The notes under the pieces: model-generated
Seen by the model: the letters and a program-made list of their open reading frames with translations, nothing else
Databases searched by the model: none
What the model was told of the DNA's origin: nothing
Translations under genes and position numbers: made by a program
Virus record (IMG/VR): IMGVR_UViG_3300008110_010000
Coordinates: 62,001-126,000 of that record
DNA: 64,000 nt
Reading direction: 5' to 3' (one strand)
Part shown: positions 1,820-51,994 of the stretch, one piece after another
Numbering within the stretch: the first letter of the stretch is position 1
How the letters are laid out: every line of letters begins with the position of its first letter

Positions 1820-1891
1820 GGCGATTTGGCCGAGTGGTTCAGGCAGGGGTCTGCAAAACCTCTTACTCCAGTTCGACTCTGGAAATCGCCT
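1820..1891 (+). tRNA. tRNA-Cys(GCA)
   Basis: Acceptor GGCGATT/AATCGCC, anticodon loop CTGCAAA, GTTCGA T-loop. Confidence 0.92.
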
Positions 1892-1899
1892 CAGAAATT

Positions 1900-1971
1900 G
1901 GGGATATAGCTCAGCGGTAGAGCAAGCGACTGTTAATCGCTAGGTCATAGGTTCGAATCCTTTTATCCCCG
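1900..1971 (+). tRNA. tRNA-Asn(GTT)
   Basis: Acceptor GGGGATA/TATCCCC, anticodon loop CTGTTAA. Confidence 0.92.
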
Positions 1972-1977
1972 CAGATG

Positions 1978-1993
1978 GTTCTTTGACATATTG
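1978..1993 (+). promoter_or_regulatory. boxA-like antitermination element GTTCTTTGACATATTG
   Basis: Resembles rrn boxA (E. coli TGCTCTTTAACA); lies in a tRNA spacer. Confidence 0.5.
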
Positions 1994-2001
1994 GAAAACT
2001 T

Positions 2002-2073
2002 GGCCCCGTCGTCTAATGGTTAGGACGCCTCCCTTTCACGGAGGAAATTTCGGTTCGACTCCGTGCGGGGCTA
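2002..2073 (+). tRNA. tRNA-Glu(TTC)
   Basis: Acceptor GGCCCCG/CGGGGCT, anticodon arm CCTCC-CTTTCAC-GGAGG. Confidence 0.9.
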
Positions 2074-2081
2074 CATTCGAG

Positions 2082-2154
2082 GATCTCTTAGCTCAATCGG
2101 TAGAGCACTACACTTTTAATGTAGGGGTTTTGGGTTCGAGTCCCAAAGGGATCA
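2082..2154 (+). tRNA. tRNA-Lys(TTT)
   Basis: Acceptor GATCTCT/AGGGATC, anticodon arm CTACA-CTTTTAA-TGTAG. Confidence 0.92.
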
Positions 2155-2243
2155 CATAATACCTTATTATAAGCTCATAGCTGAACTCTAATTTTTAATC
2201 AGATTTAGATACTATAAGCTAAAATAATCTCTTTAAACAAAGC

Positions 2244-2325
2244 GGGAGCATCGCATAGCGGCAATTGCAAGGGACTGTAAATCCCTCCTCTTACGAGTTC
2301 GGTGGTTCGAGTCCACCTGCTCCCA
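2244..2325 (+). tRNA. tRNA-Tyr(GTA)
   Basis: Acceptor GGGAGCA/TGCTCCC, anticodon arm AGGGA-CTGTAAA-TCCCT, long variable arm. Confidence 0.92.
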
Positions 2326-2326
2326 C

Positions 2327-2406
2327 AAATCAGAAGCGGTAAGAAGCGTTACTTCATCAAAATTGGATTTGACAACAACACACGCTGATTAAATATTCTC
2401 TGATTT
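2327..2406 (+). ncRNA. Candidate structured small RNA in the Tyr-Gln spacer
   Basis: Closing helix AAATCAGA/TCTGATTT with inner helices AGCGT/ACGCT and TCAAA/TTTGA. Confidence 0.35.
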
Positions 2407-2409
2407 TAT

Positions 2410-2480
2410 TGCCCGATGGTGTAATGGCAGCACAAGTGGTTTTGGTCCACTTAGTCTAGGTTCGAATCCTAGTCGGGCAT
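2410..2480 (+). tRNA. tRNA-Gln(TTG)
   Basis: Acceptor TGCCCGA/TCGGGCA, anticodon arm AGTGG-TTTTGGT-CCACT. Confidence 0.92.
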
Positions 2481-2485
2481 CATTA

Positions 2486-3142
2486 TTACCAATAATAGGA
2501 TTCCCATTTAAATTTTTCAATCGGAGTAAATACTGGTTCTTTTGTTCCGTATGATGCACGCTTCTCCACATCATCTTTAGGATTTTGAAGAATTTGGAGT
2601 GCATAATCTACAATTCTGGGTCCATGAGGTAAAACGTGAGTAACTTTATATCGGGATGCAAATTCTTTCACCCTGTTTATTATTTCAGGTAATATCTCAT
2701 AGTATTTTTCACTGTATCTTGATCCCCATGTTCTTTCAATTTTAAGATAATTTTCTGAATCCCATGATGCTCCGGGGGCGTAAACCTTTATAGGGGAGAA
2801 TTGATAAACAGTATCTATATACATAGGATGATAATAGGAGATAAGACACTCAAGTTCTTCCAGCTTATTTCCTATGAACCCCTTTATATTTTTTTCCGCA
2901 TGTTCTGCTCTTTTGATCTCGTCATTATTTAAGGTGAATCCCCCCCTCCACCCAAGATAACATGCATCAATTAATTTGGACTGATTTCTCTCGCTGAAAA
3001 GTTCCTCTATCTTTTCCTCGTTATAAATTGGCCCAGTTATTACTGTTCTATTATGGAGGATTTTTTTAAATTCCATCCCGAATAGATCTCTTCCTTTCTG
3101 AGAGATACCATAAAAACTCTCGTAAATTGTTAGATGTCTCAC
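2486..3142 (-). CDS. Hypothetical protein inserted antisense within the tRNA array
   Basis: 218-aa ORF, GTG start, AATATATA upstream, begins MRHLTIYESF. Confidence 0.65.
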   Translation of the reverse strand: MRHLTIYESFYGISQKGRDLFGMEFKKILHNRTVITGPIYNEEKIEELFSERNQSKLIDACYLGWRGGFTLNNDEIKRAEHAEKNIKGFIGNKLEELECLISYYHPMYIDTVYQFSPIKVYAPGASWDSENYLKIERTWGSRYSEKYYEILPEIINRVKEFASRYKVTHVLPHGPRIVDYALQILQNPKDDVEKRASYGTKEPVFTPIEKFKWESYYW

Positions 3143-3158
3143 AAATCTATATATTCCG

Positions 3159-3192
3159 CATTTTTTATTAATAATCCTCTTTATTAAATTTG
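3159..3192 (+). promoter_or_regulatory. Class I putative early promoter CATTTTTTAT...TAAATTTG
   Basis: Bacteroidota-type -7 element TAnnTTTG with CATTTTT starting 26 nt upstream; same geometry at five other sites. Confidence 0.55.
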
Positions 3193-3215
3193 GGATAGAT
3201 AGGAAACACTTTTAT

Positions 3216-3710
3216 ATGAAAACGAAAAAAATATTAGTGCTAATTTTTCTTTTTTTAATTCCAGCTTGGGAATTTCAAAAAGAACCAGATTTTAAATTCT
3301 TCAAAATAATTCCGGAGGAGGTAGAAAAAATTTCTCATCAAAATCTTTATAATGAAATTATTGAAAGCGGAATAAAATTCCCCGAAATAGCTTTCGTACA
3401 GGCAATTATAGAATCCGGGAATTTTACATCCGGGCTTTTTAAAAAGCATAACAATCTTTTTGGAATGAGATTTCCAGGAAGGAGAGAAACAACTTCTATA
3501 GGTAGAAACAAAAGGGGATATGCAAGATACGAAGATTGGGACGATAGCGTAAAGGATTATTTTCATTGGCAATCCTTTTTTATGAGAAGGAGAGACATCA
3601 ACACCAAAGAAGAGTATCTAGATCTTTTAGATGATGTGTATGCTGAAGATAAATCTTATGTTACTGTTATTAGAAAGAATATAAAGCAATACAAACACAT
3701 TTTTGATTAA
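3216..3710 (+). CDS. GH73 glucosaminidase (FlgJ-like peptidoglycan hydrolase) with N-terminal signal/anchor
   Basis: QAIIESG, NNLFGM, YARY..W.DSVKDY and YAED..Y motifs. Confidence 0.8.
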   Translation: MKTKKILVLIFLFLIPAWEFQKEPDFKFFKIIPEEVEKISHQNLYNEIIESGIKFPEIAFVQAIIESGNFTSGLFKKHNNLFGMRFPGRRETTSIGRNKRGYARYEDWDDSVKDYFHWQSFFMRRRDINTKEEYLDLLDDVYAEDKSYVTVIRKNIKQYKHIFD

Positions 3711-3711
3711 T

Positions 3712-3785
3712 GGACCGGTAGTTCAGCTGGTTAGAATGCCGCCCTGTCACGGCGGAGGTCGCGGGTTCGAGTCCCGTCCGGTCCG
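3712..3785 (+). tRNA. tRNA-Asp(GTC)
   Basis: Acceptor GGACCGG/CCGGTCC, anticodon arm CCGCC-CTGTCAC-GGCGG. Confidence 0.95.
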
Positions 3786-3790
3786 CAAAT

Positions 3791-3830
3791 GGTCAAAATT
3801 TGAGTAGTAAAACGGTCAAAATTTGAGTAG
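3791..3830. repeat. 17-bp direct repeat GGTCAAAATTTGAGTAG x2
   Basis: Identical copies at 3791-3807 and 3814-3830. Confidence 0.85.
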
Positions 3831-3883
3831 CAAATAATTACTAGGAACTTTTAAAATTTTTTAGCATATAATTTCGGATACTA

Positions 3884-3956
3884 GCAGCGGTGGTGTTCAA
3901 TGGTAGCACGCCAGCCTTCCAAGCTGGACGAGAGGGTTCGAATCCCTTTCGCTGCT
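3884..3956 (+). tRNA. tRNA-Gly(TCC)
   Basis: Acceptor GCAGCGG/TCGCTGC, anticodon arm CCAGC-CTTCCAA-GCTGG. Confidence 0.92.
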
Positions 3957-3962
3957 CAATAT

Positions 3963-4002
3963 AATAAACCAGATTCTGTCTAATAATCACATCTGGTTTA
4001 TT
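3963..4002. repeat. 12-bp inverted repeat between the two tRNA-Gly genes
   Basis: AATAAACCAGAT ... ATCTGGTTTATT. Confidence 0.7.
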
Positions 4003-4023
4003 TAGTAAAAACAGGTTTAGTAA

Positions 4024-4096
<73 letters not shown>

Positions 4097-4131
4097 CAAA
4101 ATATAAAAACAAGTATTTTTATAAATAGAAC

Positions 4132-6644: not shown

Positions 6645-7616
6645 TTAAACTTCTATATCTCCGTTTTTATAAACCTTCTTTATAGTTTTAATAGCTCCGC
6701 TATCTAATCTTACTTTTTGTCCGGTTTTAGGTAACTCCAATTCTCCGGATCCTCCCTCGGCATTTCCTGATCCTCCTTCACCTTCACCTTCTCCTTCACC
6801 TTCACCTTCTCCCTCGCCTTCTCCTTCACCTTCTCCCTCGCCTTCTCCCTCGCCTTCTCCCTCGCCTTCTCCTTCGCCTTCTCCTTCGCCTTCTCCCTCG
6901 CCTTCTCCTTCGCCTTCTCCCTCGCCTTCTCCCTCGCCTTCTCCCTCGCCTTCTCCCTCTCCTTCACCTTCTCCCGGTTGGTTATCATCAATTTCGGGGG
7001 TTTCCTCTTGGGGTTCTTCCGCATCCTTAGTGATTGAATCTTTCTCCCCAAGAACAGTTTCAGTAACTTGATCATGATCTATAGCTCCCGGCTCAAAAAC
7101 GTCACAATATGATTTAAAGAAAGGGTCTATTTTTAATCTACCAGATTTTATCTGGTCATAGATTTCTTCAGCAGAGAGATCCTGGAATTTTGAAGATTGC
7201 ATGGTAGTAGGAAGCTTTGATTTTCCAATACCATCTAAAAAAGCTTCAGCTGCCATGTCACATGCTGCGTTCCAGATATTAGTATCTTTACTTCCGATCC
7301 TATCATAGTGATCTAAAGCAAGATGAGAAATTCCTTGGCTAATAGCCCAGATTATTTCGTCTTCAGAAAGATCTATAACATTTTTAGGATTAAATATGAA
7401 TATGGTGCCATCAGTTGAAAAATATTCGCATTCATCAGAAACTCCTACTGGGATTTCAGCAAGAACCCTCCCGAATAATCCCTCTTTCATTAAGATTTTT
7501 GAAACCGATCTTCTAACTCGCATGACTGCTCTTTCATAGTCCTGCTCACTAATTCCGTAACTTGATGAATTTTCTAACAGAATACCATATTCTGCAAAGT
7601 TTCTAATTTTTCTCAT
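6645..7616 (-). CDS. DUF2201 N-terminal metallopeptidase-like protein with degenerate HExxH and a (GE)n tract
   Basis: STDG, QGISHLALDH in place of HExxH, WNAACD, SAEEIYD. Confidence 0.7.
   Translation of the reverse strand: MRKIRNFAEYGILLENSSSYGISEQDYERAVMRVRRSVSKILMKEGLFGRVLAEIPVGVSDECEYFSTDGTIFIFNPKNVIDLSEDEIIWAISQGISHLALDHYDRIGSKDTNIWNAACDMAAEAFLDGIGKSKLPTTMQSSKFQDLSAEEIYDQIKSGRLKIDPFFKSYCDVFEPGAIDHDQVTETVLGEKDSITKDAEEPQEETPEIDDNQPGEGEGEGEGEGEGEGEGEGEGEGEGEGEGEGEGEGEGEGEGEGEGEGEGEGEGEGEGEGEGEGEGEGGSGNAEGGSGELELPKTGQKVRLDSGAIKTIKKVYKNGDIEV
6775..6975 (-). repeat. Coding 6-/12-bp tandem repeat encoding about 33 Gly-Glu units
   Basis: CCTTCTCCCTCG and CCTTCA repeats on the plus strand. Confidence 0.95.
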
Positions 7617-44704: not shown

Positions 44705-46981
44705 ATGGATAGAATTAACTTTGACAATAATCTAGACCAAATTAAAATGGAAAAGGCTAAGGCTGCTGCAAACAGTTTAAATGAAAGTTGGGCAGGAACC
44801 AAGGCATTTGGACCAGGCACAGCTGGATCCTACGTTGATGGTCTACAAAAAGAGATTGCTCAAGCATCTGCTCAAGGAACTAAGATATCTAAACCAACTT
44901 TCTCTGTTGGTGTTTTAGAAACTGCAATGGCTTTGAATAATACATCTTTCGTTGAATTACATGAAGCTAAGATTTTGGTTGAAAAATACATTCATCATGC
45001 ATCAATTAAAGGAGTTTCTGAAGCTTTCTTAATTGAATCTATGATTTCAGAATTGGAAAATTTTAGCTGGGAAAAACACGCTAAAAGCTCTTTAGTTAAT
45101 CTAAAGAAGATTTACGAAAAAAACAGAAAAGAAATCGAAGTTGCTAAGGCAATCGAAGATATTAATAGATCAGGAGGCAGAGACCTTTTCTCTTCTATTG
45201 TTGAATCAATGAGAACTTGGTTAGACACAGAGAACAGGGTTTCTGAGAAACTGGTTAATGACCTTAAAAAATGGTCCTTCAATCCAACAGTTAGAAGCTT
45301 GGTTGAGAAGTTTACACAGCTTGAGGGAAGCAATGGTAAATTCTCTATCAATGTTAATTCTGAAAATTGCGAGGTAAAATCTATCATAGCGCCAAGTTTA
45401 GTTTTTGAGAACCATTCGGTTTTTGTTACTTCAGATAGATTCTTCAAGGCAACTCAAAGAGGCGTATCTGTTATGGAAAGAGCAGAAGCTTCTAAACTCC
45501 CTGGAAAATTCTTAAAAGCAGCTTTATCACTTAGCAATCCTGCTGTAAGAATTAACGAGAATGGTTTAGATATGTTCATCGGGAAAAATAAGCTTTCTGT
45601 AGTTTTTGAAAGTGACACCGAAACAAAGGCAGTATTCCTTAACGGAAAAAGAATTCCAGAAGACAGATTAGGATTTATCCTTTCTATGGAATTGAGAAAT
45701 TCGTTCCAATCTTCTGCAAGTATAGTAGAACAAGCTACTGAAGTAGTAAAAGCTGCTAATTTCCTTTCTGAAATTGATTTTGGTAAAAAAATCGTTTCTA
45801 AAATATACGAAGGGGTAGAAGCTAACGTATTTAGATTCGGACAAAAAGTTTATGTTCACAAAGTTAACCCAGCTATGAAGAAGAATGATTTATTCGAGGG
45901 TAACGGAACACAGGCAGTTAATATAGTTAAAGAATTTTTAGGATTTGATATTTCTGAATCAATGTCAGATATTCTAGAAAACGAAGATAGAGCTTTAGCT
46001 ATCATGAGAAACGATAAGCAAGCTATTAAGAACAACATGTCTATTGTTGAAAGTGAAATGGCAAAAATTGCAAAAGCAATTCAGGATAATCCATCTCTTA
46101 CTGGATCTCAAGAGATTAAAGAAGCTCAAGCAATGCTTCAAAAAGAATCTGAATCTCTAAAAGATAAATGGAACCAAATCAATGTTGAAATCGAGAGATT
46201 TGAAAAGTATGCTAAAAAGGTTTCTTCAGTTAACGAAAGTGACGGATATCAAATAAACACAGACGTTAAGATCAGAAGAAACGGAGAAAAAGGTAAGGTT
46301 GTAGGGGTTAACGGTAATTCTAAAACATACACTGTTATGTTTGAAAACGGTAGAACGGGAGAATACTTCTTTAATGATGTAGTTGATATTTCAGACGAAA
46401 TTGAAAACATTGAACTTAAACCAGTAAATGATCTAGGCGAAGAATCAATCGAAAACATAGAAATAGAAGGATCAGAAGCAAACGAAGGCCTAGATGCTGA
46501 TATGAATTTAGCTGAGGCACCTTCTAAATCTGCTGGGGGATCTGCTAAAGATATTGATAATTTAGGAAATCATAACCTATCTGAAGCCCCTAATAAGCAA
46601 GCTAAATCTGCTAAAGATCCTAGAGGAGTAACTGGAAATCATGAATTAGCTTCCGCTCCAGAGGGAAAATCTGGAAAAGATAAAAAATTCATCGATAAAG
46701 AAGGTAATATGAACCTGGCAGAAGCTCCTGGCACAAGTGCAGGCGCAGCTCCTAAATTTATTGACAATTTGAAAAATCACAAACTTTCTGAATCACAAAA
46801 GAATTCGCATGTTGAAAAAGCACCTAAAGGAAAATCTGAAAAACCTAAAAAATTTGTAGAAGATTTAGATGATGCTGAATTAGCAGAAGCACCAGGTAAT
46901 CACAAGAAAAATGGCAAGAAAGATCATGAACCTCTTAACAGAGCAACCCTTGCAAAAGCACCTGCTTCAAAAAAAAAGTAA
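44705..46981 (+). CDS. Large late protein, possible prohead core/scaffold, with C-terminal LAEAP repeats
   Basis: Tandem GATATATA promoters (44614, 44675), coiled coil, many L-x-E sites. Confidence 0.6.
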   Translation: MDRINFDNNLDQIKMEKAKAAANSLNESWAGTKAFGPGTAGSYVDGLQKEIAQASAQGTKISKPTFSVGVLETAMALNNTSFVELHEAKILVEKYIHHASIKGVSEAFLIESMISELENFSWEKHAKSSLVNLKKIYEKNRKEIEVAKAIEDINRSGGRDLFSSIVESMRTWLDTENRVSEKLVNDLKKWSFNPTVRSLVEKFTQLEGSNGKFSINVNSENCEVKSIIAPSLVFENHSVFVTSDRFFKATQRGVSVMERAEASKLPGKFLKAALSLSNPAVRINENGLDMFIGKNKLSVVFESDTETKAVFLNGKRIPEDRLGFILSMELRNSFQSSASIVEQATEVVKAANFLSEIDFGKKIVSKIYEGVEANVFRFGQKVYVHKVNPAMKKNDLFEGNGTQAVNIVKEFLGFDISESMSDILENEDRALAIMRNDKQAIKNNMSIVESEMAKIAKAIQDNPSLTGSQEIKEAQAMLQKESESLKDKWNQINVEIERFEKYAKKVSSVNESDGYQINTDVKIRRNGEKGKVVGVNGNSKTYTVMFENGRTGEYFFNDVVDISDEIENIELKPVNDLGEESIENIEIEGSEANEGLDADMNLAEAPSKSAGGSAKDIDNLGNHNLSEAPNKQAKSAKDPRGVTGNHELASAPEGKSGKDKKFIDKEGNMNLAEAPGTSAGAAPKFIDNLKNHKLSESQKNSHVEKAPKGKSEKPKKFVEDLDDAELAEAPGNHKKNGKKDHEPLNRATLAKAPASKKK

Positions 46982-47220
46982 ATAGTATTTCTGAAAATTA
47001 CGAAAAGTTCGTTTCTGAGGGTATCGGAAACGAACTTTTTCTTTTCCAGGAAGACCTACAAGACATTTTAGGTAAATTAAAAGAATTGGAAACAACTAGT
47101 CATGCTAGTAGTAAGATAGGATTGAGTACTATTGAAGACTCAATAAAAAACCTAGAAGCCCTAAAAAAAGATGTTGAAGGCCAGATAGGCAAACTAGAAA
47201 ATAATTTCCCACAAAACTAA
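46972..47220 (+). other. Putative -1 programmed frameshift (A_AAA_AAG) with 80-codon extension frame
   Basis: Slippery heptamer before the stop, downstream stem-loop, ATG-less -1 frame open to TAA 47220. Confidence 0.7.
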
Positions 47221-47576
47221 TGGAGTATGTTAAAAACAAAGAGCTTAAAAGGGCATTGCTAGAATCCAAAGAAAAAGGAAGATTGACAGCAGAAACGGTA
47301 AAGATGTTTACACTTATTGTTAATGGTCTTTCTAAAACTAAATCTTATCGAGATATCGAAGATAAAGAGGATTGTATTGCTTTCGGAATGGAGGATCTAA
47401 TTAAATATTGGGACAGATTCGATCCCAATAAATCAGACAACCCGTTCGCATTTATCTCACAGATAGCTAAAAATGGTATGCAAAAAGGATGGAAAAAAAT
47501 ACATTCTACAAGATCTATAAAAACAATATCTTTTTCTAGGTTAACTAGAGATGATAATCAGAACTTCAATGTCTAA
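47220..47576 (+). CDS. Late-transcription sigma factor (T4 gp55-like)
   Basis: YVKNKEL, FDPNKSDNPFAFISQI. Confidence 0.8.
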   Translation: MEYVKNKELKRALLESKEKGRLTAETVKMFTLIVNGLSKTKSYRDIEDKEDCIAFGMEDLIKYWDRFDPNKSDNPFAFISQIAKNGMQKGWKKIHSTRSIKTISFSRLTRDDNQNFNV

Positions 47577-48063
47577 AATTAATATCAAAAATATTAAGCC
47601 CAATGGTAAATTTAAATCAGGAAAGTTTGTACCAACTAATCCGGAAAAGTATATTGGGGATATTCATGATATAATTTATAGATCCTCTTGGGAAGGAAGA
47701 TTTTGTCAATACTGTGACCAAAATCCAAATATTTTAAAATGGGCATCAGAAGCTGTTCAAATAGAATATTGGAATCCCATCGATAAAAAAACACACACAT
47801 ATCATCCCGATTATTATATAAAGGTAAAAAAAGCTGACGGATCAACAGAGGACTGGATTCTTGAAATTAAGCCATCTGCTCAGTACAAATTGGAAAAAAA
47901 ACCAACAATCTCCGGAAACTTAACTGAGAAGAAGGTTAGATCTTATAATCAAGCCATGGAAATATGGATTGTTAACAGAGCTAAATTTGATGCTGCGACT
48001 CGTTTTGCTAAGCACAATGGCTATAGATTTGGTGCCGTTGATGAAAATTTTATCTTTAGATAA
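47569..48063 (+). CDS. Head completion nuclease (T4 gp4/TnsA-like)
   Basis: NPEKY.G, YRSSWE, WASE, Y.PD, EIKP, N.AK. Confidence 0.85.
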   Translation: MSKINIKNIKPNGKFKSGKFVPTNPEKYIGDIHDIIYRSSWEGRFCQYCDQNPNILKWASEAVQIEYWNPIDKKTHTYHPDYYIKVKKADGSTEDWILEIKPSAQYKLEKKPTISGNLTEKKVRSYNQAMEIWIVNRAKFDAATRFAKHNGYRFGAVDENFIFR

Positions 48064-48635
48064 TGGATTTTAAAAGGGAAATTAGAGAGGCAATAGAAAA
48101 GGCTGGATCTCCTGGAAAATTGACAGAGGAGAGTTTTTTACATTATACCAATAATTATTCAGTTTTAAAAAAATCTGAATCTATAAAGAATTTAATTCAG
48201 GGGAAAATATTTACTTTTTACTACGATTCCCCAAAGAGAAAGGACCAGGAATTTGTTAATAAAAGACCCGTCATATTTTATGAAGGATCTGAGATTAGCC
48301 CAGAAAGATCCATTATTAAAGGAGTAGATTTGGTCCTATTAACACCAAGAGACCGAACTAATTTTTTTATTAGGCTCTATACTATATTTGGTAAAATCAT
48401 GGAGCAAAATGAAAAGAGAGAGATTTCATCCCAAATGCCTCTCAGATTCGATTCTGAGATTTTAGAAACTTTAATGGGAGGAGTTAAGTATAATCATGCA
48501 TACCGTGGTTACAAGTTGGAAAAGATAAAGGGTCTTTCCGAAATACCAAGCGATGAATGGAAGTATTTAGTGTATCTAGATACTAAGTCTTTAGAGGGGG
48601 CTATTTTGAATGATATATACAATAAATTCGGATAA
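48063..48635 (+). CDS. DNA end protector-like protein (T4 gp2-like)
   Basis: GKIFTFYYD..K pattern; position beside gp4 and portal. Confidence 0.5.
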   Translation: MDFKREIREAIEKAGSPGKLTEESFLHYTNNYSVLKKSESIKNLIQGKIFTFYYDSPKRKDQEFVNKRPVIFYEGSEISPERSIIKGVDLVLLTPRDRTNFFIRLYTIFGKIMEQNEKREISSQMPLRFDSEILETLMGGVKYNHAYRGYKLEKIKGLSEIPSDEWKYLVYLDTKSLEGAILNDIYNKFG

Positions 48636-50278
48636 TGGCAGGATTTTTAGAAAACAACAGAAATAATCCATTTTTTAGCAACGTTCTAAGTGCTCTTAGA
48701 AAAATAGGGTCATTTGGGATGAGCTATGGGGATATGGTTGTTAAAAACTCCCAGGCCGTTGGTACTACTGAAGCGATTTTCACGCAAAAGGGTGGAATTC
48801 TGGACGAAAATTTCCTTTATACCCTCAGAAAAGCTGACACTACTGCGAAACAGTATATTGCTTATTTCGATAAAGATTACAAGAACAAAAAGACCTATTT
48901 AAGAAATTTTGCTCTTAACCCCGAAATTGAATTTATTCTCGATACAGTTTGTGACGAAGCGATAGTTTATGATGATAAAAACTTTTTCTCCTATTTTGTT
49001 AGTACAGACATTCATGGGATTGGGGAGAAAAAAGAAGCTAAAATTCAAGAAAGGTATAAAGAGATCTATAATTTATTTGGATTTAATCAGGACATTTCAG
49101 GATGGCATTTTTTTAGAAACTTCCTCATTGATGGTATTCTGGCATTTGAAATTATTTTTGACACAAAGGGAAAAAATATTATTGGGTTTAAGGAATTAGA
49201 CCCAGCATCTCTTCTTCCGTCTGTCGAAAAACAGATGGATGGATCTTTTGTTGAGTGCTGGATACAATATCCAGATAACCCTGCTCTAACCAGAAAATTA
49301 TATGATTCTCAGATCATTTATATTTCCTATGCAAAGGGAAATACAATGACGAGGGTAAGCTATATCGAAAGATTAATTAGATCGTTTAATCTTTTGAGAA
49401 TCATGGAACACACCAGGGTGATCTGGAATGTAATGAATTCTTCCTATAGAATGACCATGACAGTTCCGATCGGAACTAAATCACCACAAAAGGCCAAGCA
49501 AAGTCTTGCAGAATTAATGAGTATCTATAAAGAAGATATCAGATTAGATTCGGATTCTGGTGAACTTTTCGTAAACGGTAGACCTAACATTCAGTTCTTC
49601 AAGAATTATTTAATGCCTTCAACCCCGAACGGAACACCAGACATTGCTCCATTAGCAGGATCCGGGGACGCAACACCTTTTAGCGATCTTAAAGCTTTAG
49701 CTTATTTTGCTGATAAATTAAAACTTGATTCTAAAATTCCATATTCGAGATTTGATCGTGAAGATAGAGGAACACAAGGAACTTTTAGTGGTAACGCAGA
49801 AGGATTGGATCAAGAAGAAATAAGATTCTTTAAATTTATAACCAGATTAAGATCTATTTTCCAGGACATTCTTGTAAAACCCCTTTGGATCCAATTTTGT
49901 TTGGATTATCCGGAGCATAAGAAGGATTTTATGGTTAAGAGCCAATTTGGTTTGGATTATGTGAAAGATAATTCTTTTGCTGAAATAAGATACATGGAGA
50001 TTCTAAATGCTAGAAAAGATCAGGTAACAAAAATTTCAGGATTGACTGATTCTGAAGGTAAACCTTATTTTTCATTAAGATATGTGCTCGACAAGTACTT
50101 AGGTATGACTGACGATGACAGGGTAGCTAACGAGAAAGCCAAGGAAAGAGATGCTGAGAAAAAGAAGAAAGCCGCTGAAGAGGAAGCTAAAAAAGCAGCA
50201 GAGACGGCTCCAGCGGCAGAAGAAGGAGCAGGAACAGAAGGAGCAGGAACAGAAGGAGGAGACGAATTTAAACTTTAA
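48635..50278 (+). CDS. Portal protein (gp20-like), copy 1
   Basis: EI...DEAIV, FR.F.IDG, LDP, SY.ER, N.L..ME, KIP.SRF, EIRF.KFI.RLR. Confidence 0.85.
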   Translation: MAGFLENNRNNPFFSNVLSALRKIGSFGMSYGDMVVKNSQAVGTTEAIFTQKGGILDENFLYTLRKADTTAKQYIAYFDKDYKNKKTYLRNFALNPEIEFILDTVCDEAIVYDDKNFFSYFVSTDIHGIGEKKEAKIQERYKEIYNLFGFNQDISGWHFFRNFLIDGILAFEIIFDTKGKNIIGFKELDPASLLPSVEKQMDGSFVECWIQYPDNPALTRKLYDSQIIYISYAKGNTMTRVSYIERLIRSFNLLRIMEHTRVIWNVMNSSYRMTMTVPIGTKSPQKAKQSLAELMSIYKEDIRLDSDSGELFVNGRPNIQFFKNYLMPSTPNGTPDIAPLAGSGDATPFSDLKALAYFADKLKLDSKIPYSRFDREDRGTQGTFSGNAEGLDQEEIRFFKFITRLRSIFQDILVKPLWIQFCLDYPEHKKDFMVKSQFGLDYVKDNSFAEIRYMEILNARKDQVTKISGLTDSEGKPYFSLRYVLDKYLGMTDDDRVANEKAKERDAEKKKKAAEEEAKKAAETAPAAEEGAGTEGAGTEGGDEFKL

Positions 50279-50281
50279 TAA

Positions 50282-51994
50282 ATGGCAGGATTTATAGATG
50301 ATTTTTCACAAAGGAATCCTAATATAGGAAAGATCCTTAAGAGTGTGAGCAAGATAGGAAGCTTCGGAATGGAGTATAAGGATCTTGTTGTGAAAAATTC
50401 ACAGGCCATTGGTGTTTCCGAAGCAATGATGAGGGAAAGAATGGGTCTTACCGATTCAGATGAAGATTTCATTTTTAGTTTGGCTTCTCAAGACACTAGT
50501 AACAGAAAGTATATTGCTTACTTTGATAAAGACTATCCTTTTAAGAGAGAGTTTTTACGCAGGTTTGCTTTAAATGCAGAAATAGAATGGATCCTTGATA
50601 TTCTTGCTGATGAAGCTATAGTTTACGATGATAGAAATTTTTGTTGTAGTCTATCTCTTGTTAATATGGATCTCAAAGAAGATGTTGTTGATTCATTAAG
50701 AGATAACTTTAGAAAAATGTATATCTCCCATGGATTTAATAATGGGATATCCGCTTGGCAATATTTTAGACAGTTTTTAATTGACGGATTTTTATCTTTC
50801 GAAATTGTTTATTCTGATGATGGAAGGCAAATTGTAGGATTTAAAGAATTGGATCCAACATCATTGACCCCGACAACAGAAAGAAACCAGTCGGGGGAGA
50901 CGATTCCTATCTGGATTCAATATTATGGAGATAGTACTAGAGAAAGAAGGCTTTACGATTCTCAAGTCATTTATATTTCATTTGCCAAAGGAAATAGCGC
51001 TAGTAGAACTAGTTACTGTGAAAGATTGATACGTTCACATAATCTTTTAAAGATTATGGAGCATACCAGAATTATCTGGAATGTGATGAATGCCTCTTTC
51101 AGAATTAAGATGACAATTCCAGTTGGATCTAGATCTCCACAAAAAGCAAAAGAGACTTTAGGTGAATTGATGACCATGTATAAAGAGGATATCAAATTAA
51201 ACACAGAATCAGGCGAACTGAGTGTTAACGGAAGACCCAATTTACAGTTTTATAAAAACTATCTTTTCCCAGTTCAAGGTGGGGAATCTCCTAAGATTGA
51301 GACCATCAATTCTGCTGGACCAAATCTTAATATCATAGATGCTGTTGTATACTTTTTCAATAAGCTTAAGGCAGACTCTAAAATACCTTTTAACAGATTT
51401 GCTGCTAGATCAGGCGGAACAGTTGGAACTTACAAGATAGGTGCTGAATCTGCTGAAAGAGATGAAATCAGATACAATAAGTTCATTAATAGAATCAGAT
51501 CGATCTATCAAGAGATCATGCTTAAACCTCTTTGGATCCAAATGACGTTAGATCATCCAGAATTGAAAAATGACGCAGTTTTCAGATCTCAGCTAGGTAT
51601 CAAATGGAACTCTGATAATCAATTTGGAGAATCCAAAGAGATTGAACAGCTGATTAAAAAAATAGATTTTATAGCAGGACTTTCAGAAATTAAGGAAAAG
51701 AAAGGCGAGGAAGAAAATCCTTATTTTAGTCAAGACTTCTTAATAGATAAATTCCTCGGATTAACCAACGAGGATCGTAGGGTAAATGAAATCTATAAGA
51801 AGAAAGACGAAGAAGAAAATGCTGAAATTAAGGTTGAAGGGGACGGCGGAGCAGGAGGGGGAGCCTCTATAGAACCTCCTGCAGCAGATACCACAGAATC
51901 AACTCCGGCGGATGAACCAGAAGCACCCGCAGCAGAGGAGCCGGCAGCTACCCCTGAACCCCCAGCAGAGCCAGCAGCAGCTGAAGCTCCATAA
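50282..51994 (+). CDS. Portal protein (gp20-like), copy 2
   Basis: Full-length paralogue with the same motifs. Confidence 0.85.
   Translation: MAGFIDDFSQRNPNIGKILKSVSKIGSFGMEYKDLVVKNSQAIGVSEAMMRERMGLTDSDEDFIFSLASQDTSNRKYIAYFDKDYPFKREFLRRFALNAEIEWILDILADEAIVYDDRNFCCSLSLVNMDLKEDVVDSLRDNFRKMYISHGFNNGISAWQYFRQFLIDGFLSFEIVYSDDGRQIVGFKELDPTSLTPTTERNQSGETIPIWIQYYGDSTRERRLYDSQVIYISFAKGNSASRTSYCERLIRSHNLLKIMEHTRIIWNVMNASFRIKMTIPVGSRSPQKAKETLGELMTMYKEDIKLNTESGELSVNGRPNLQFYKNYLFPVQGGESPKIETINSAGPNLNIIDAVVYFFNKLKADSKIPFNRFAARSGGTVGTYKIGAESAERDEIRYNKFINRIRSIYQEIMLKPLWIQMTLDHPELKNDAVFRSQLGIKWNSDNQFGESKEIEQLIKKIDFIAGLSEIKEKKGEEENPYFSQDFLIDKFLGLTNEDRRVNEIYKKKDEEENAEIKVEGDGGAGGGASIEPPAADTTESTPADEPEAPAAEEPAATPEPPAEPAAAEAP

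What the first reader, a model, noticed from the sequence alone, without database searches (positions are those of the whole stretch)
46967..47220. Programmed -1 ribosomal frameshift extending the putative core protein by 80 residues
Seen: the ORF ends TCA AAA AAA AAG TAA, containing the A_AAA_AAG heptamer (46972-46978). A 16-bp stem (47003-47039), extendable down to about 46988, follows. The -1 frame is open for 80 codons (VNSISENYEKFVSEG...NNFPQN), has no ATG, looks like a coiled coil and stops in TAATG coupled to the gp55-like start. Known: A_AAA_AAG plus a hairpin drives dnaX and IS frameshifts. Inference: two isoforms are made (758 and about 838 aa). The hairpin with its U-tract may double as a terminator, so frameshifting could also tune expression of the late sigma factor.
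Basis: partly seen in the sequence, partly recalled or inferred. Interest (0 to 1): 0.72.

Follow-up and report, generated by a model that had tools for sequence, protein, structure and literature searches.

The report
Conserved A-run frameshift extends phage protein
In an uncultured freshwater T4-like phage, a run of nine A's at the end of a 758-residue gene of the virion-gene region lets a fraction of expression slip into the -1 frame and add an 80-residue helical tail; relatives as distant as 30% identity keep this arrangement, so it is real programmed recoding and not a sequencing error.

Summary
ORF 44705-46981 ends TCA AAA AAA AAG TAA, with an A9 run at 46969-46977. The -1 frame is open for 80 codons (46978-47217). 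Its stop overlaps the start of the gp55-like late sigma gene (TAATG).

It is not an assembly error. Every relative examined that carries an A9 or A10 run directly before the stop also has an open -1 extension, down to about 30% protein identity. The one exception cannot be judged because its contig ends 8 codons in. The three lineages examined that lack the run lack the extension.

The extension evolves as coding sequence (pN/pS 0.19-0.39 over the whole ORF). Four relatives have no ATG, GTG or TTG anywhere in it. No protein database entry carries it fused in frame.

Recoding on the A-run is therefore well supported. Whether RNA polymerase or the ribosome slips is unresolved. I lean towards polymerase slippage, because at least nine A's are conserved (more than a heptamer needs) and the following base varies.

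The 17-bp hairpin is real and covaries. It is best read as the gene's intrinsic terminator embedded in the extension. It occurs without the frameshift in some clades, and the frameshift occurs without it in another clade.

The "core protein" label is unsupported. This is a new member of a known kind.

The parts
44705..46981 (+). Main ORF, 758 aa (P0001). Residues 1-568 are folded and 569-758 are a disordered Lys-rich tail with repeated NLAxAP-like motifs. Function unknown. It lies among virion genes, between tail-fibre-like genes and gp55/gp4/gp2/gp20.
46969..46977 (+). A9 run, the slip site. It contains the overlapping heptamers A_AAA_AAA (46969-46975) and A_AAA_AAG (46972-46978). Relatives with the extension carry A9 or A10. 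The codon before the run always ends in A although its amino acid varies (S, T, A, Q or L).
46979..46981 (+). 0-frame stop TAA, placed exactly one base after the A-run in every run-bearing locus (TAG in L036). It may act as a 'shifty stop'.
46978..47220 (+). -1 frame extension: 80 codons (P0002) plus stop TAA at 47218-47220. No conserved start codon. Under purifying selection. Predicted helical hairpin (helices 16-44 and 49-75).
47002..47040 (+). Conserved RNA hairpin: 17-bp core (47002-47018 / 47024-47040) with loop 47019-47023. A weaker lower stem extends it to about 46985-47055.
47036..47045 (+). T-rich tract TTTTTCTTTT that overlaps and follows the 3' arm. Together with the hairpin it looks like an intrinsic terminator embedded in the extension ORF.
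47220..47576 (+). gp55-like late sigma factor gene (118 aa). Its ATG overlaps the extension's stop (TAATG). Across the homologous-extension clades the gap is 0-20 nt.

Best explanation
This is a programmed -1 recoding site on a homopolymeric A-run. Standard expression ends at TAA 46979-46981 and gives the 758-aa protein. A minority of expression events slip by one base within the A9 run (46969-46977), enter the -1 frame and add 80 residues, giving an 838-aa isoform of the form ...ASKKK-VNSISE.... The added residues put a helical hairpin at the end of a disordered tail of about 190 residues.

The product is the same wherever in the run the slip happens and at whichever level. My estimates for the level are: about 50% that the main event is RNA-polymerase realignment on the 9-bp rA:dT hybrid, giving A10 mRNA read normally; about 35% that it is ribosomal -1 slippage of tRNA-Lys on A_AAA_AAA / A_AAA_AAG helped by the adjacent stop codon; the remainder that both contribute.

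The strong hairpin with its U-tract, 23 nt after the stop, is most likely the gene's intrinsic terminator and not an obligatory frameshift stimulator.

Shown here: the site, its conservation, the coding nature of the extension, the absence of a start codon, and the hairpin covariation. Inferred: that slippage occurs, at what level and rate, and what the long isoform does. The confidence given (0.8) is for conserved A-run recoding that yields the two isoforms, not for the level at which the slip occurs.
For: 1. Not an error. The identical A9 sequence is found in three other IMG/VR contigs and in a 7.2-kb contig of DNA run X1.

2. Conservation of the site. All 21 related loci L002-L022, down to 41% protein identity, end NCA AAA AAA AA(G/C) TAA and have a -1 frame open for 80-86 codons. 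Clades at 30-43% identity also have A9 or A10 directly before the stop and a -1 ORF (L023, L025, L028/29, L030). Run lengths are 9 or 10. In L036 the contig ends 8 codons into the -1 frame. Of 95 family proteins of at least 600 aa, 81 end in KK[K/N].

3. Co-occurrence. The lineages examined as DNA that lack the run (L026/27, L031-34, L035) have a -1 frame open for 8 codons at most. L031 and L035 keep decayed nucleotide relics of the extension. On the protein tree the forms without the KK[K/N] ending fall in three nested clades, and the deepest clade all carries that ending.

4. The extension is coding. pN/pS is 0.19-0.39 over the whole ORF and third-position changes dominate. The part before any start codon has pN/pS 0.3-0.7. 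L013, L016, L017 and L022 have no ATG, GTG or TTG anywhere in the ORF.

5. Never fused. None of the 97 homologues is an in-frame fusion. A profile of the extension searched against 1.84 billion proteins found only 45-74-aa fragments called from internal starts.

6. Signature of transcriptional realignment. The wobble A of the preceding S/T/A/Q/L codon is kept in every locus, so at least 9 A's are selected. The next base varies (G, C, T or A). Runs of nine A or T are the published threshold, and the published criterion for functional slippage (conserved ORF organisation plus a conserved 9A run in non-identical homologues) is met (PMC1088944, PMC5009743).

7. The hairpin as terminator. There are 17 and 19 predicted pairs with compensatory changes in two clades that use different 5' arms, and a T-rich tract always follows. 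Clades without the frameshift have canonical terminators 23-27 nt after the stop, the same offset. The distant frameshifting clade has no comparable hairpin.
Against: There is no direct evidence that a slipped mRNA or an 838-aa protein exists. The only RNA data were short assembled contigs that stop at 46941-46961, before the run.

A sense-strand T9 run sits in the middle of an ordinary 319-aa ORF elsewhere in the genome. So 9-runs are tolerated, and polymerase slippage may be modest in this host.

The stop codon lies directly after the run in every locus. Pure transcriptional slippage does not explain this, and it points to a translational component.

A_AAA_AAG, the best ribosomal shift site in E. 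coli, is the commonest form.

One otherwise identical contig carries A8 (L037), so there is some DNA-level or assembly length variation.

The simple terminator scan did not flag the hairpin.

Part of the extension's conservation (TGGAAACTTC and nearby) persists in non-coding relics. It could be a cis element for gp55.
Confidence: 0.8

Rival explanations
1. Classical dnaX/IS-type -1 programmed ribosomal frameshift. Tandem tRNA-Lys slippage occurs on A_AAA_AAG (46972-46978), stimulated by the downstream hairpin.
For: The heptamer is in the correct phase. G is the commonest base after the run. The stop is adjacent in all loci. The hairpin is strong and conserved, and its weak lower stem could start about 9 nt after the heptamer. 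A_AAA_AAG is the most shift-prone heptamer in E. coli (PMC5009743).
Against: The hairpin core starts 23 nt after the heptamer (17-18 nt in the L018 clade), outside the usual 5-9 nt. Hairpin and frameshift are dissociable. The distant clade has the run and the extension but no comparable hairpin, and clades without the frameshift keep a hairpin with U-tract at the same offset. Two further A's beyond the heptamer are conserved at a wobble position. About 30% of family members have AAC or AAT in place of AAG.
Confidence: 0.15
2. Homopolymer sequencing or assembly error, or a recent frameshift pseudogene. The true gene would be a single 838-aa ORF (A10), or the tail would be dead sequence.
For: The contig is a metagenome assembly. 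One near-identical contig has A8.
Against: A9 or A10 in the same phase with the same ORF layout recurs in dozens of independent assemblies spanning 30-100% protein identity. No fused homologue exists among 97 hits or in 1.84 billion representatives. The extension is under purifying selection.
Confidence: 0.02
3. The 80-codon frame is a separate small gene with its own, possibly non-canonical, start. It would be unrelated to the upstream ORF.
For: Gene callers-74-aa ORFs from internal ATG or TTG codons in some relatives. The window has TTG at codon 37.
Against: No start codon is conserved, and four relatives have no ATG, GTG or TTG at all in the frame. Protein-level conservation and pN/pS below 1 begin at the junction. 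The frame is open only where the upstream gene ends in an A-run.
Confidence: 0.04
4. DNA-level phase variation. Replication slippage would create A9 and A10 sub-populations of phage genomes, and only A10 genomes would make the long form.
For: Homopolymer runs mutate quickly. An A8 variant contig exists.
Against: No A10-fused variant appears among the near-identical assemblies or protein clusters. The phase is held stably across deep divergence, so selection acts on the out-of-frame state itself.
Confidence: 0.05

Closest known systems
Thermus thermophilus dnaX and the 9A-type IS-element ORF fusions (programmed transcriptional realignment; Larsen et al. 2000 from my own knowledge, not read here; Baranov 2005 PMC1088944)
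   Same: A run of nine A's in the sense strand lies at the overlap of two frames. No downstream stimulator is needed. The run and the ORF layout are conserved among non-identical homologues. Standard translation of the slipped mRNA gives the second product.
   Different: In dnaX the slip truncates the protein, whereas here it extends it. Here the stop codon is always directly adjacent to the run. Here the gene belongs to a phage virion-gene region. RNA heterogeneity has not been shown here.
E. coli dnaX and IS911/IS3 -1 programmed ribosomal frameshifting (A_AAA_AAG plus a 3' hairpin or pseudoknot)
   Same: The heptamer is the same and in the same phase. A stable hairpin lies downstream. Two products result in a set ratio.
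   Different: The hairpin core is 23 nt away, against about 6 nt in dnaX. No upstream Shine-Dalgarno-like element was noticed by eye, but none was formally searched for. The run is longer than the heptamer. In relatives the hairpin and the frameshift occur without each other.
Frameshift-made C-terminal extensions of phage structural proteins: T7 gene 10A/10B (from my own knowledge) and the Lactobacillus phage A2 major head protein and the lambda-type G/GT tail chaperone work (A2 and the tail-chaperone paper are both listed in PRFect's reference list, PMC10885494)
   Same: A gene in a phage virion-gene region makes a major short form and a minor long form through a -1 shift near its 3' end.
   Different: The protein family is unrelated and of unknown role. 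The slip site is a 9-10 A run abutting the stop. For T4-like phages, the paper cited by PRFect (PMC10885494) suggests that the tail chaperone forms are made by a mechanism other than frameshifting. This would therefore be an unusual recoding case for the group.
Ribosome-dependent repression of intrinsic terminators inside or close behind coding regions (Li et al. 2016, PMC4824070)
   Same: A terminator hairpin lies about 23 nt behind one frame's stop codon and inside the other frame's coding region. Whether it fires should depend on whether a ribosome is translating through it.
   Different: That work used engineered constructs. No natural frame-dependent case coupled to a sigma-factor gene is known to me. 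It is untested here.

Membership tests
Programmed transcriptional realignment, 9A/9T type | Homopolymeric run of at least 9 A or T at the frame overlap | tested here: met
   A9 at 46969-46977. Relatives with the extension carry A9 or A10.
Programmed transcriptional realignment, 9A/9T type | Same ORF organisation and a conserved run in non-identical homologues (criterion of Baranov 2005, PMC1088944) | tested here: met
   More than 20 distinct loci at 30-97% identity share the layout. Lineages without the run lack the extension.
Programmed transcriptional realignment, 9A/9T type | Heterogeneous mRNA population (A10 and others) from an A9 template | tested here: inconclusive
   The RNA runs X19, X25 and X26 are held only as short contigs ending at 46941-46961, before the run.
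-1 programmed ribosomal frameshift (dnaX/IS type) | X_XXY_YYZ slippery heptamer in the 0-frame phase | tested here: met
   A_AAA_AAG at 46972-46978 and A_AAA_AAA at 46969-46975.
-1 programmed ribosomal frameshift (dnaX/IS type) | Stimulatory RNA structure starting about 5-9 nt 3' of the heptamer, co-conserved with the shift site | tested here: not met
   The core stem starts 23 nt downstream. Only a weak AU-rich lower stem reaches about 9 nt. No comparable hairpin is found in L023, L025 or L030, which keep the frameshift. A hairpin with U-tract is present in L026, L031 and L035, which lack it.
-1 programmed ribosomal frameshift (dnaX/IS type) | Trans-frame protein made from unaltered mRNA | not testable with these tools
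   This needs proteomics together with RNA sequencing.
Intrinsic (Rho-independent) terminator | Stable G+C-containing stem-loop followed directly by a U-tract | tested here: met
   17-bp stem, -27.6 kcal/mol, z -4.4, followed by TTTTTCTTTT. Relatives have CTCTTTTTTT or TTTTATTTT. The simple scan did not flag it, apparently because the stem absorbs part of the T-tract.
Intrinsic (Rho-independent) terminator | Structure conserved by compensatory change | tested here: met
   5 of 17 pairs and 3 of 19 pairs show double changes. The two clades pair the same 3' arm with different 5' arms.
Intrinsic (Rho-independent) terminator | Transcript 3' ends at the U-tract | not testable with these tools
   RNA contigs do not reach the site. 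This needs Term-seq or 3' RACE.
   No Pfam or PHROG hit. Fold searches match only uncharacterised myovirus proteins, a Tudor/SH3-like domain and generic helical hairpins.
   The window protein has LAEAP repeats, but in relatives the Glu is replaced: LAAAP, LAKAP, MAVAP, LSSAP.

The most novel reading that the evidence does not exclude
The extension ORF is laid over the gene's own intrinsic terminator and ends on the start codon of the late sigma factor gene. Expression in the 0 frame stops 23 nt before the hairpin, so the terminator can fire. Expression in the -1 frame, from A10 mRNA or a shifted ribosome, carries a ribosome through the hairpin. That would suppress termination and deliver ribosomes to the translationally coupled gp55 start. 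Slippage on the A-run would then set both an isoform ratio and the read-through supply of the late sigma factor, as a frame-dependent attenuator.
Probability: 0.2. Interest if true: 0.8.

Novelty: new member of a known kind. Interest (0 to 1): 0.55.

Why it matters
Gene callers miss the extension in every relative: the public records examined either leave a gap of about 240 nt after the main ORF or call only a 45-97-residue fragment there. The annotation of a whole clade of abundant freshwater T4-like phages therefore lacks a conserved protein domain.

The site is a clean natural test case for separating polymerase slippage from ribosomal slippage, because it combines an A9 run, an adjacent stop and an optional hairpin.

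The nesting of terminator, extension ORF and sigma-factor start suggests a testable link between recoding and control of late transcription.

It also shows that an A-run directly before a stop, followed by an "empty" gap, is a useful search pattern for recoding in phage metagenomes.

Tried and rejected
- RNA evidence. Two run searches and the single read-laying run found only Logan contigs. The RNA contigs end before the run, so A9 versus A10 in RNA could not be read, and RNA depth around the terminator is uninformative.
- Cultured relatives. Searches of 50,697 phage records by megablast and tblastn found none. There was one 24%-identity hit to an unannotated uncultured phage and no hit for the extension.
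- Identity of the 758-aa protein. Pfam, PHROGs, Foldseek against PDB and BFVD, the VIA wide search and the ESM Atlas gave no function. The "core protein" label and the gp21-cleavage reading of the LAEAP repeats were rejected.
- The 843-977-aa homologues were suspected to be in-frame fusions. They are not. They have longer repeat regions and still end in KKK/KKN, or they belong to a clade without the run.
- Rfam. Nothing reached the gathering score. A PyrG-leader match at E 0.5 is at chance level.
- T4 late promoter TATAAATA. It does not occur anywhere in or near the locus (nearest copies at window 862 and 4120), and it is not enriched in the window.
- The simple terminator scan did not call the hairpin.
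- Census of 9-runs in the 219-kb genome. There are five, and none is longer. The census did not decide the mechanism.
Full report
WHAT IS THERE. The window is bases 62001-126000 of a 219,355-bp IMG/VR contig (35% G+C) from a T4-like phage. ORF 44705-46981 encodes 758 aa and ends TCA AAA AAA AAG TAA. The A-run is nine bases long (46969-46977). It contains A_AAA_AAG (46972-46978) and also A_AAA_AAA (46969-46975). The -1 frame is open from 46978 for 80 codons. Its TAA (47218-47220) overlaps the ATG of a 118-aa gp55-like late sigma gene (phrog_234 at 6e-17, Sigma70_r2). Downstream come genes for gp4-like head completion, gp2-like DNA end protector and gp20 portal. Upstream are collagen-like and glycine-rich tail-fibre-like genes. 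A 17-bp hairpin (47002-47018 / 47024-47040) folds at -27.6 kcal/mol with z = -4.4.

NOT AN ERROR. The identical A9 sequence occurs in three other IMG/VR contigs from different samples (L002-L004). It also occurs in a 7.2-kb contig of DNA run X1 with no differences. One otherwise identical contig has A8 (L037). No contig has A10 in the phase that would fuse the two frames.

CONSERVATION.
- All 21 related viral loci, down to 41% protein identity, end NCA AAA AAA AA(G/C) TAA and have a -1 frame open for 80-86 codons.
- More distant lineages behave the same way. L028/29 have GCA AAA AAA AAA TAA (A10). L025 has CAA AAA AAA AAG TAA (A10). L023 has A9-C-TAA, L030 has A9-T-TAA and L036 has A9-G-TAG (its contig ends 8 codons into the -1 frame).
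- In L023, L025 and L030 the -1 ORF is 53-60 codons of a different sequence: it continues the xxAP repeats, ends in an acidic tail, and is conserved between L023 and L030.
- Of 95 family proteins of at least 600 aa, 81 end in KK[K/N].
- The lineages examined as DNA whose gene does not end in an A-run (L026/27, L031-34, L035) have a -1 frame of 8 codons at most. They have a canonical terminator 23-27 nt after the stop instead.
- L031 and L035 still show nucleotide relics of the extension.
- On a maximum-likelihood tree the forms without the KK[K/N] ending make three nested clades among 47 rows with it, and the deepest clade all carries the ending. This suggests an old site lost several times. 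The root is only a midpoint root.

THE EXTENSION IS CODING AND HAS NO START OF ITS OWN. Pairwise pN/pS is 0.19-0.39 over the whole ORF, and third codon positions carry most of the differences. The first 37 alignment columns, before any canonical start in the window, have pN/pS 0.3-0.7. L013, L016, L017 and L022 contain no ATG, GTG or TTG anywhere in the frame. A profile of 17 extensions searched against 1.84 billion representative proteins found eight hits. All are 45-74-aa fragments called from internal starts, and none is part of a long protein. AlphaFold predicts a helical hairpin (helices 16-44 and 49-75, mean pLDDT 80). The frame is therefore translated, from the junction onwards, as a C-terminal extension.

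THE HAIRPIN. Among the 13 sequences of the window's clade, 17 pairs are predicted and 5 of them show compensatory changes. In the L018/19/20/28 clade, 19 pairs are predicted. There the homologous 3' arm pairs with a different 5' arm three codons further upstream. In both clades a T-rich tract follows directly (TTTTTCTTTT, CTCTTTTTTT, TTTTATTTT). The core starts 23 nt after the stop (17-18 nt in the second clade). That matches the offset of the plain terminators in the clades that have lost the frameshift. The distant clade keeps the run and the extension without a comparable hairpin. The hairpin thus occurs without the frameshift, and the frameshift without the hairpin. I therefore read the hairpin as the gene's intrinsic terminator embedded in the extension ORF, and not as a dnaX-type stimulator. 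The weak lower stem that would bring it to about 9 nt from the heptamer is AU-rich and is not consistently predicted.

WHICH MACHINE SLIPS.
- The product is the same (...SKKK-VNS...) for a slip on either heptamer and for an mRNA with one extra A.
- For the polymerase: the wobble A of the preceding Ser, Thr, Ala, Gln or Leu codon is kept in every locus, so at least nine A's are selected, more than a heptamer needs. The base after the run is G, C, T or A, and about 30% of proteins end in KKN. Nine is the run length at which bacterial polymerases slip efficiently and at which selection against such runs appears. A conserved 9A run with conserved ORF layout is the published criterion for functional realignment (PMC5009743, PMC1088944). 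A phage with a gp55-type sigma presumably uses the host core polymerase (inference).
- For the ribosome: the stop is directly adjacent in every locus ("shifty stop"). A_AAA_AAG, the best E. coli shift site, is the commonest form.
- Against strong polymerase slippage: a sense-strand T9 run sits inside an ordinary 319-aa ORF elsewhere in the genome.
- I could not obtain RNA reads across the run. My split is roughly 50% polymerase, 35% ribosome and 15% both.

THE PROTEIN. Residues 1-568 fold with pLDDT 70-88, and 569-758 are disordered, Lys-rich and carry NLAxAP-like repeats. There is no Pfam or PHROG family. Foldseek against BFVD finds uncharacterised proteins of other large myoviruses, including Tenacibaculum phage PTm1 (E 1e-17 to 3e-23). 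PDB searches match only a Tudor/SH3-like domain (about 520-565) and generic helical hairpins (425-505). The Glu of the LAEAP repeats is not conserved in relatives, so a gp21-cleavage reading is not supported. Its place among virion genes is context only, and the function is unknown.

A POSSIBLE REGULATORY LAYER (inference). The 0-frame stop lies 23 nt before the terminator, while the -1 frame runs through it. Translating ribosomes repress intrinsic terminators that lie inside or very close behind a coding region (PMC4824070). Only frame-shifted expression should therefore read through. The extension's stop lies 0-20 nt from the gp55 start in all loci of the homologous-extension clades. This would couple slippage to the supply of the late sigma factor. 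It is untested, and I give it about 0.2.

COMPARISON AND NOVELTY. The logic matches known recoding: T. thermophilus dnaX and 9A IS elements at the transcription level, dnaX and IS911 at the translation level, and T7 10A/10B and phage A2 head protein for structural isoforms. I found no description of this family or site. No cultured phage carries it, and gene callers leave the extension uncalled or call only a 45-97-residue fragment of it. I file it as a new member of a known kind, with a possibly new regulatory variant.

Noticed in passing
window 48635-50278 and 50282-51994: There are two adjacent gp20-type portal genes (547 and 570 aa). Both match phrog_213 (E 6e-64 and 5e-58), and the first also matches Pfam Portal_T4. 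Tandem portal paralogues are unusual.
   Followed up: no
window 1820-4097 (tRNAs); G000:C1:41802-42184, outside the window (tmRNA): ARAGORN finds 21 phage-encoded tRNAs in the genome. Nine lie in the window, including tRNA-Lys(UUU) at window 2082-2155 and tRNA-Asn(GUU) at 1900-1972, the tRNAs that decode the slip site. It also calls a phage tmRNA. The phage may thus supply the very tRNA that reads the A-run, and a rescue system for non-stop mRNAs.
   Followed up: partly
L037:3265-3272 (contig of ERZ27247979): A contig otherwise identical to the window carries A8 in place of A9, which puts the extension in the +1 frame. The gene caller then called a 97-aa ORF from an upstream ATG. This is either a homopolymer assembly error or natural length variation.
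   Followed up: partly
L031:3814-4024 and L035:3817-4010: In lineages that lost the A-run and the extension, the spacer before gp55 still keeps short blocks identical to the extension's most conserved nucleotides (TGGAAACTTCTA, GGTAAAA, AGGGAAAAT). They may be relics of decay or a cis element for gp55 expression.
   Followed up: partly
G000:C1:17643-17651 and 7362-7370 (outside the window): The other coding 9-runs are a sense-strand T9 (Asp-Phe-Phe-Leu) in the middle of a 319-aa minus-strand ORF, and a sense-strand A9 two codons before the stop of a 163-aa minus-strand ORF. The genome has no run longer than 9.
   Followed up: partly
window 46411-46978 (residues 569-758 of P0001): The disordered Lys-rich C-terminal tail carries about eight repeats of an N-L-[AS]-x-A-P-like motif. 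The repeat number varies widely among relatives (proteins of 720-977 aa). The distant clade's frameshift extension continues the same motif (SFAP, SVAP).
   Followed up: partly
window 47551-48063: The gp4-like head completion gene (phrog_218, E 2e-43) also matches Pfam Tn7_TnsA-like_N. It overlaps the 3' end of the gp55-like gene by 26 nt.
   Followed up: no
window 46742-46961: Three metatranscriptome runs from different studies each hold a short contig (165-210 nt) that covers only the last ~230 nt of the main ORF and ends 8-28 nt before the A-run. All carry T>C at 46855. This may reflect assembly breaking at a run of variable length, or simply low coverage.
   Followed up: no
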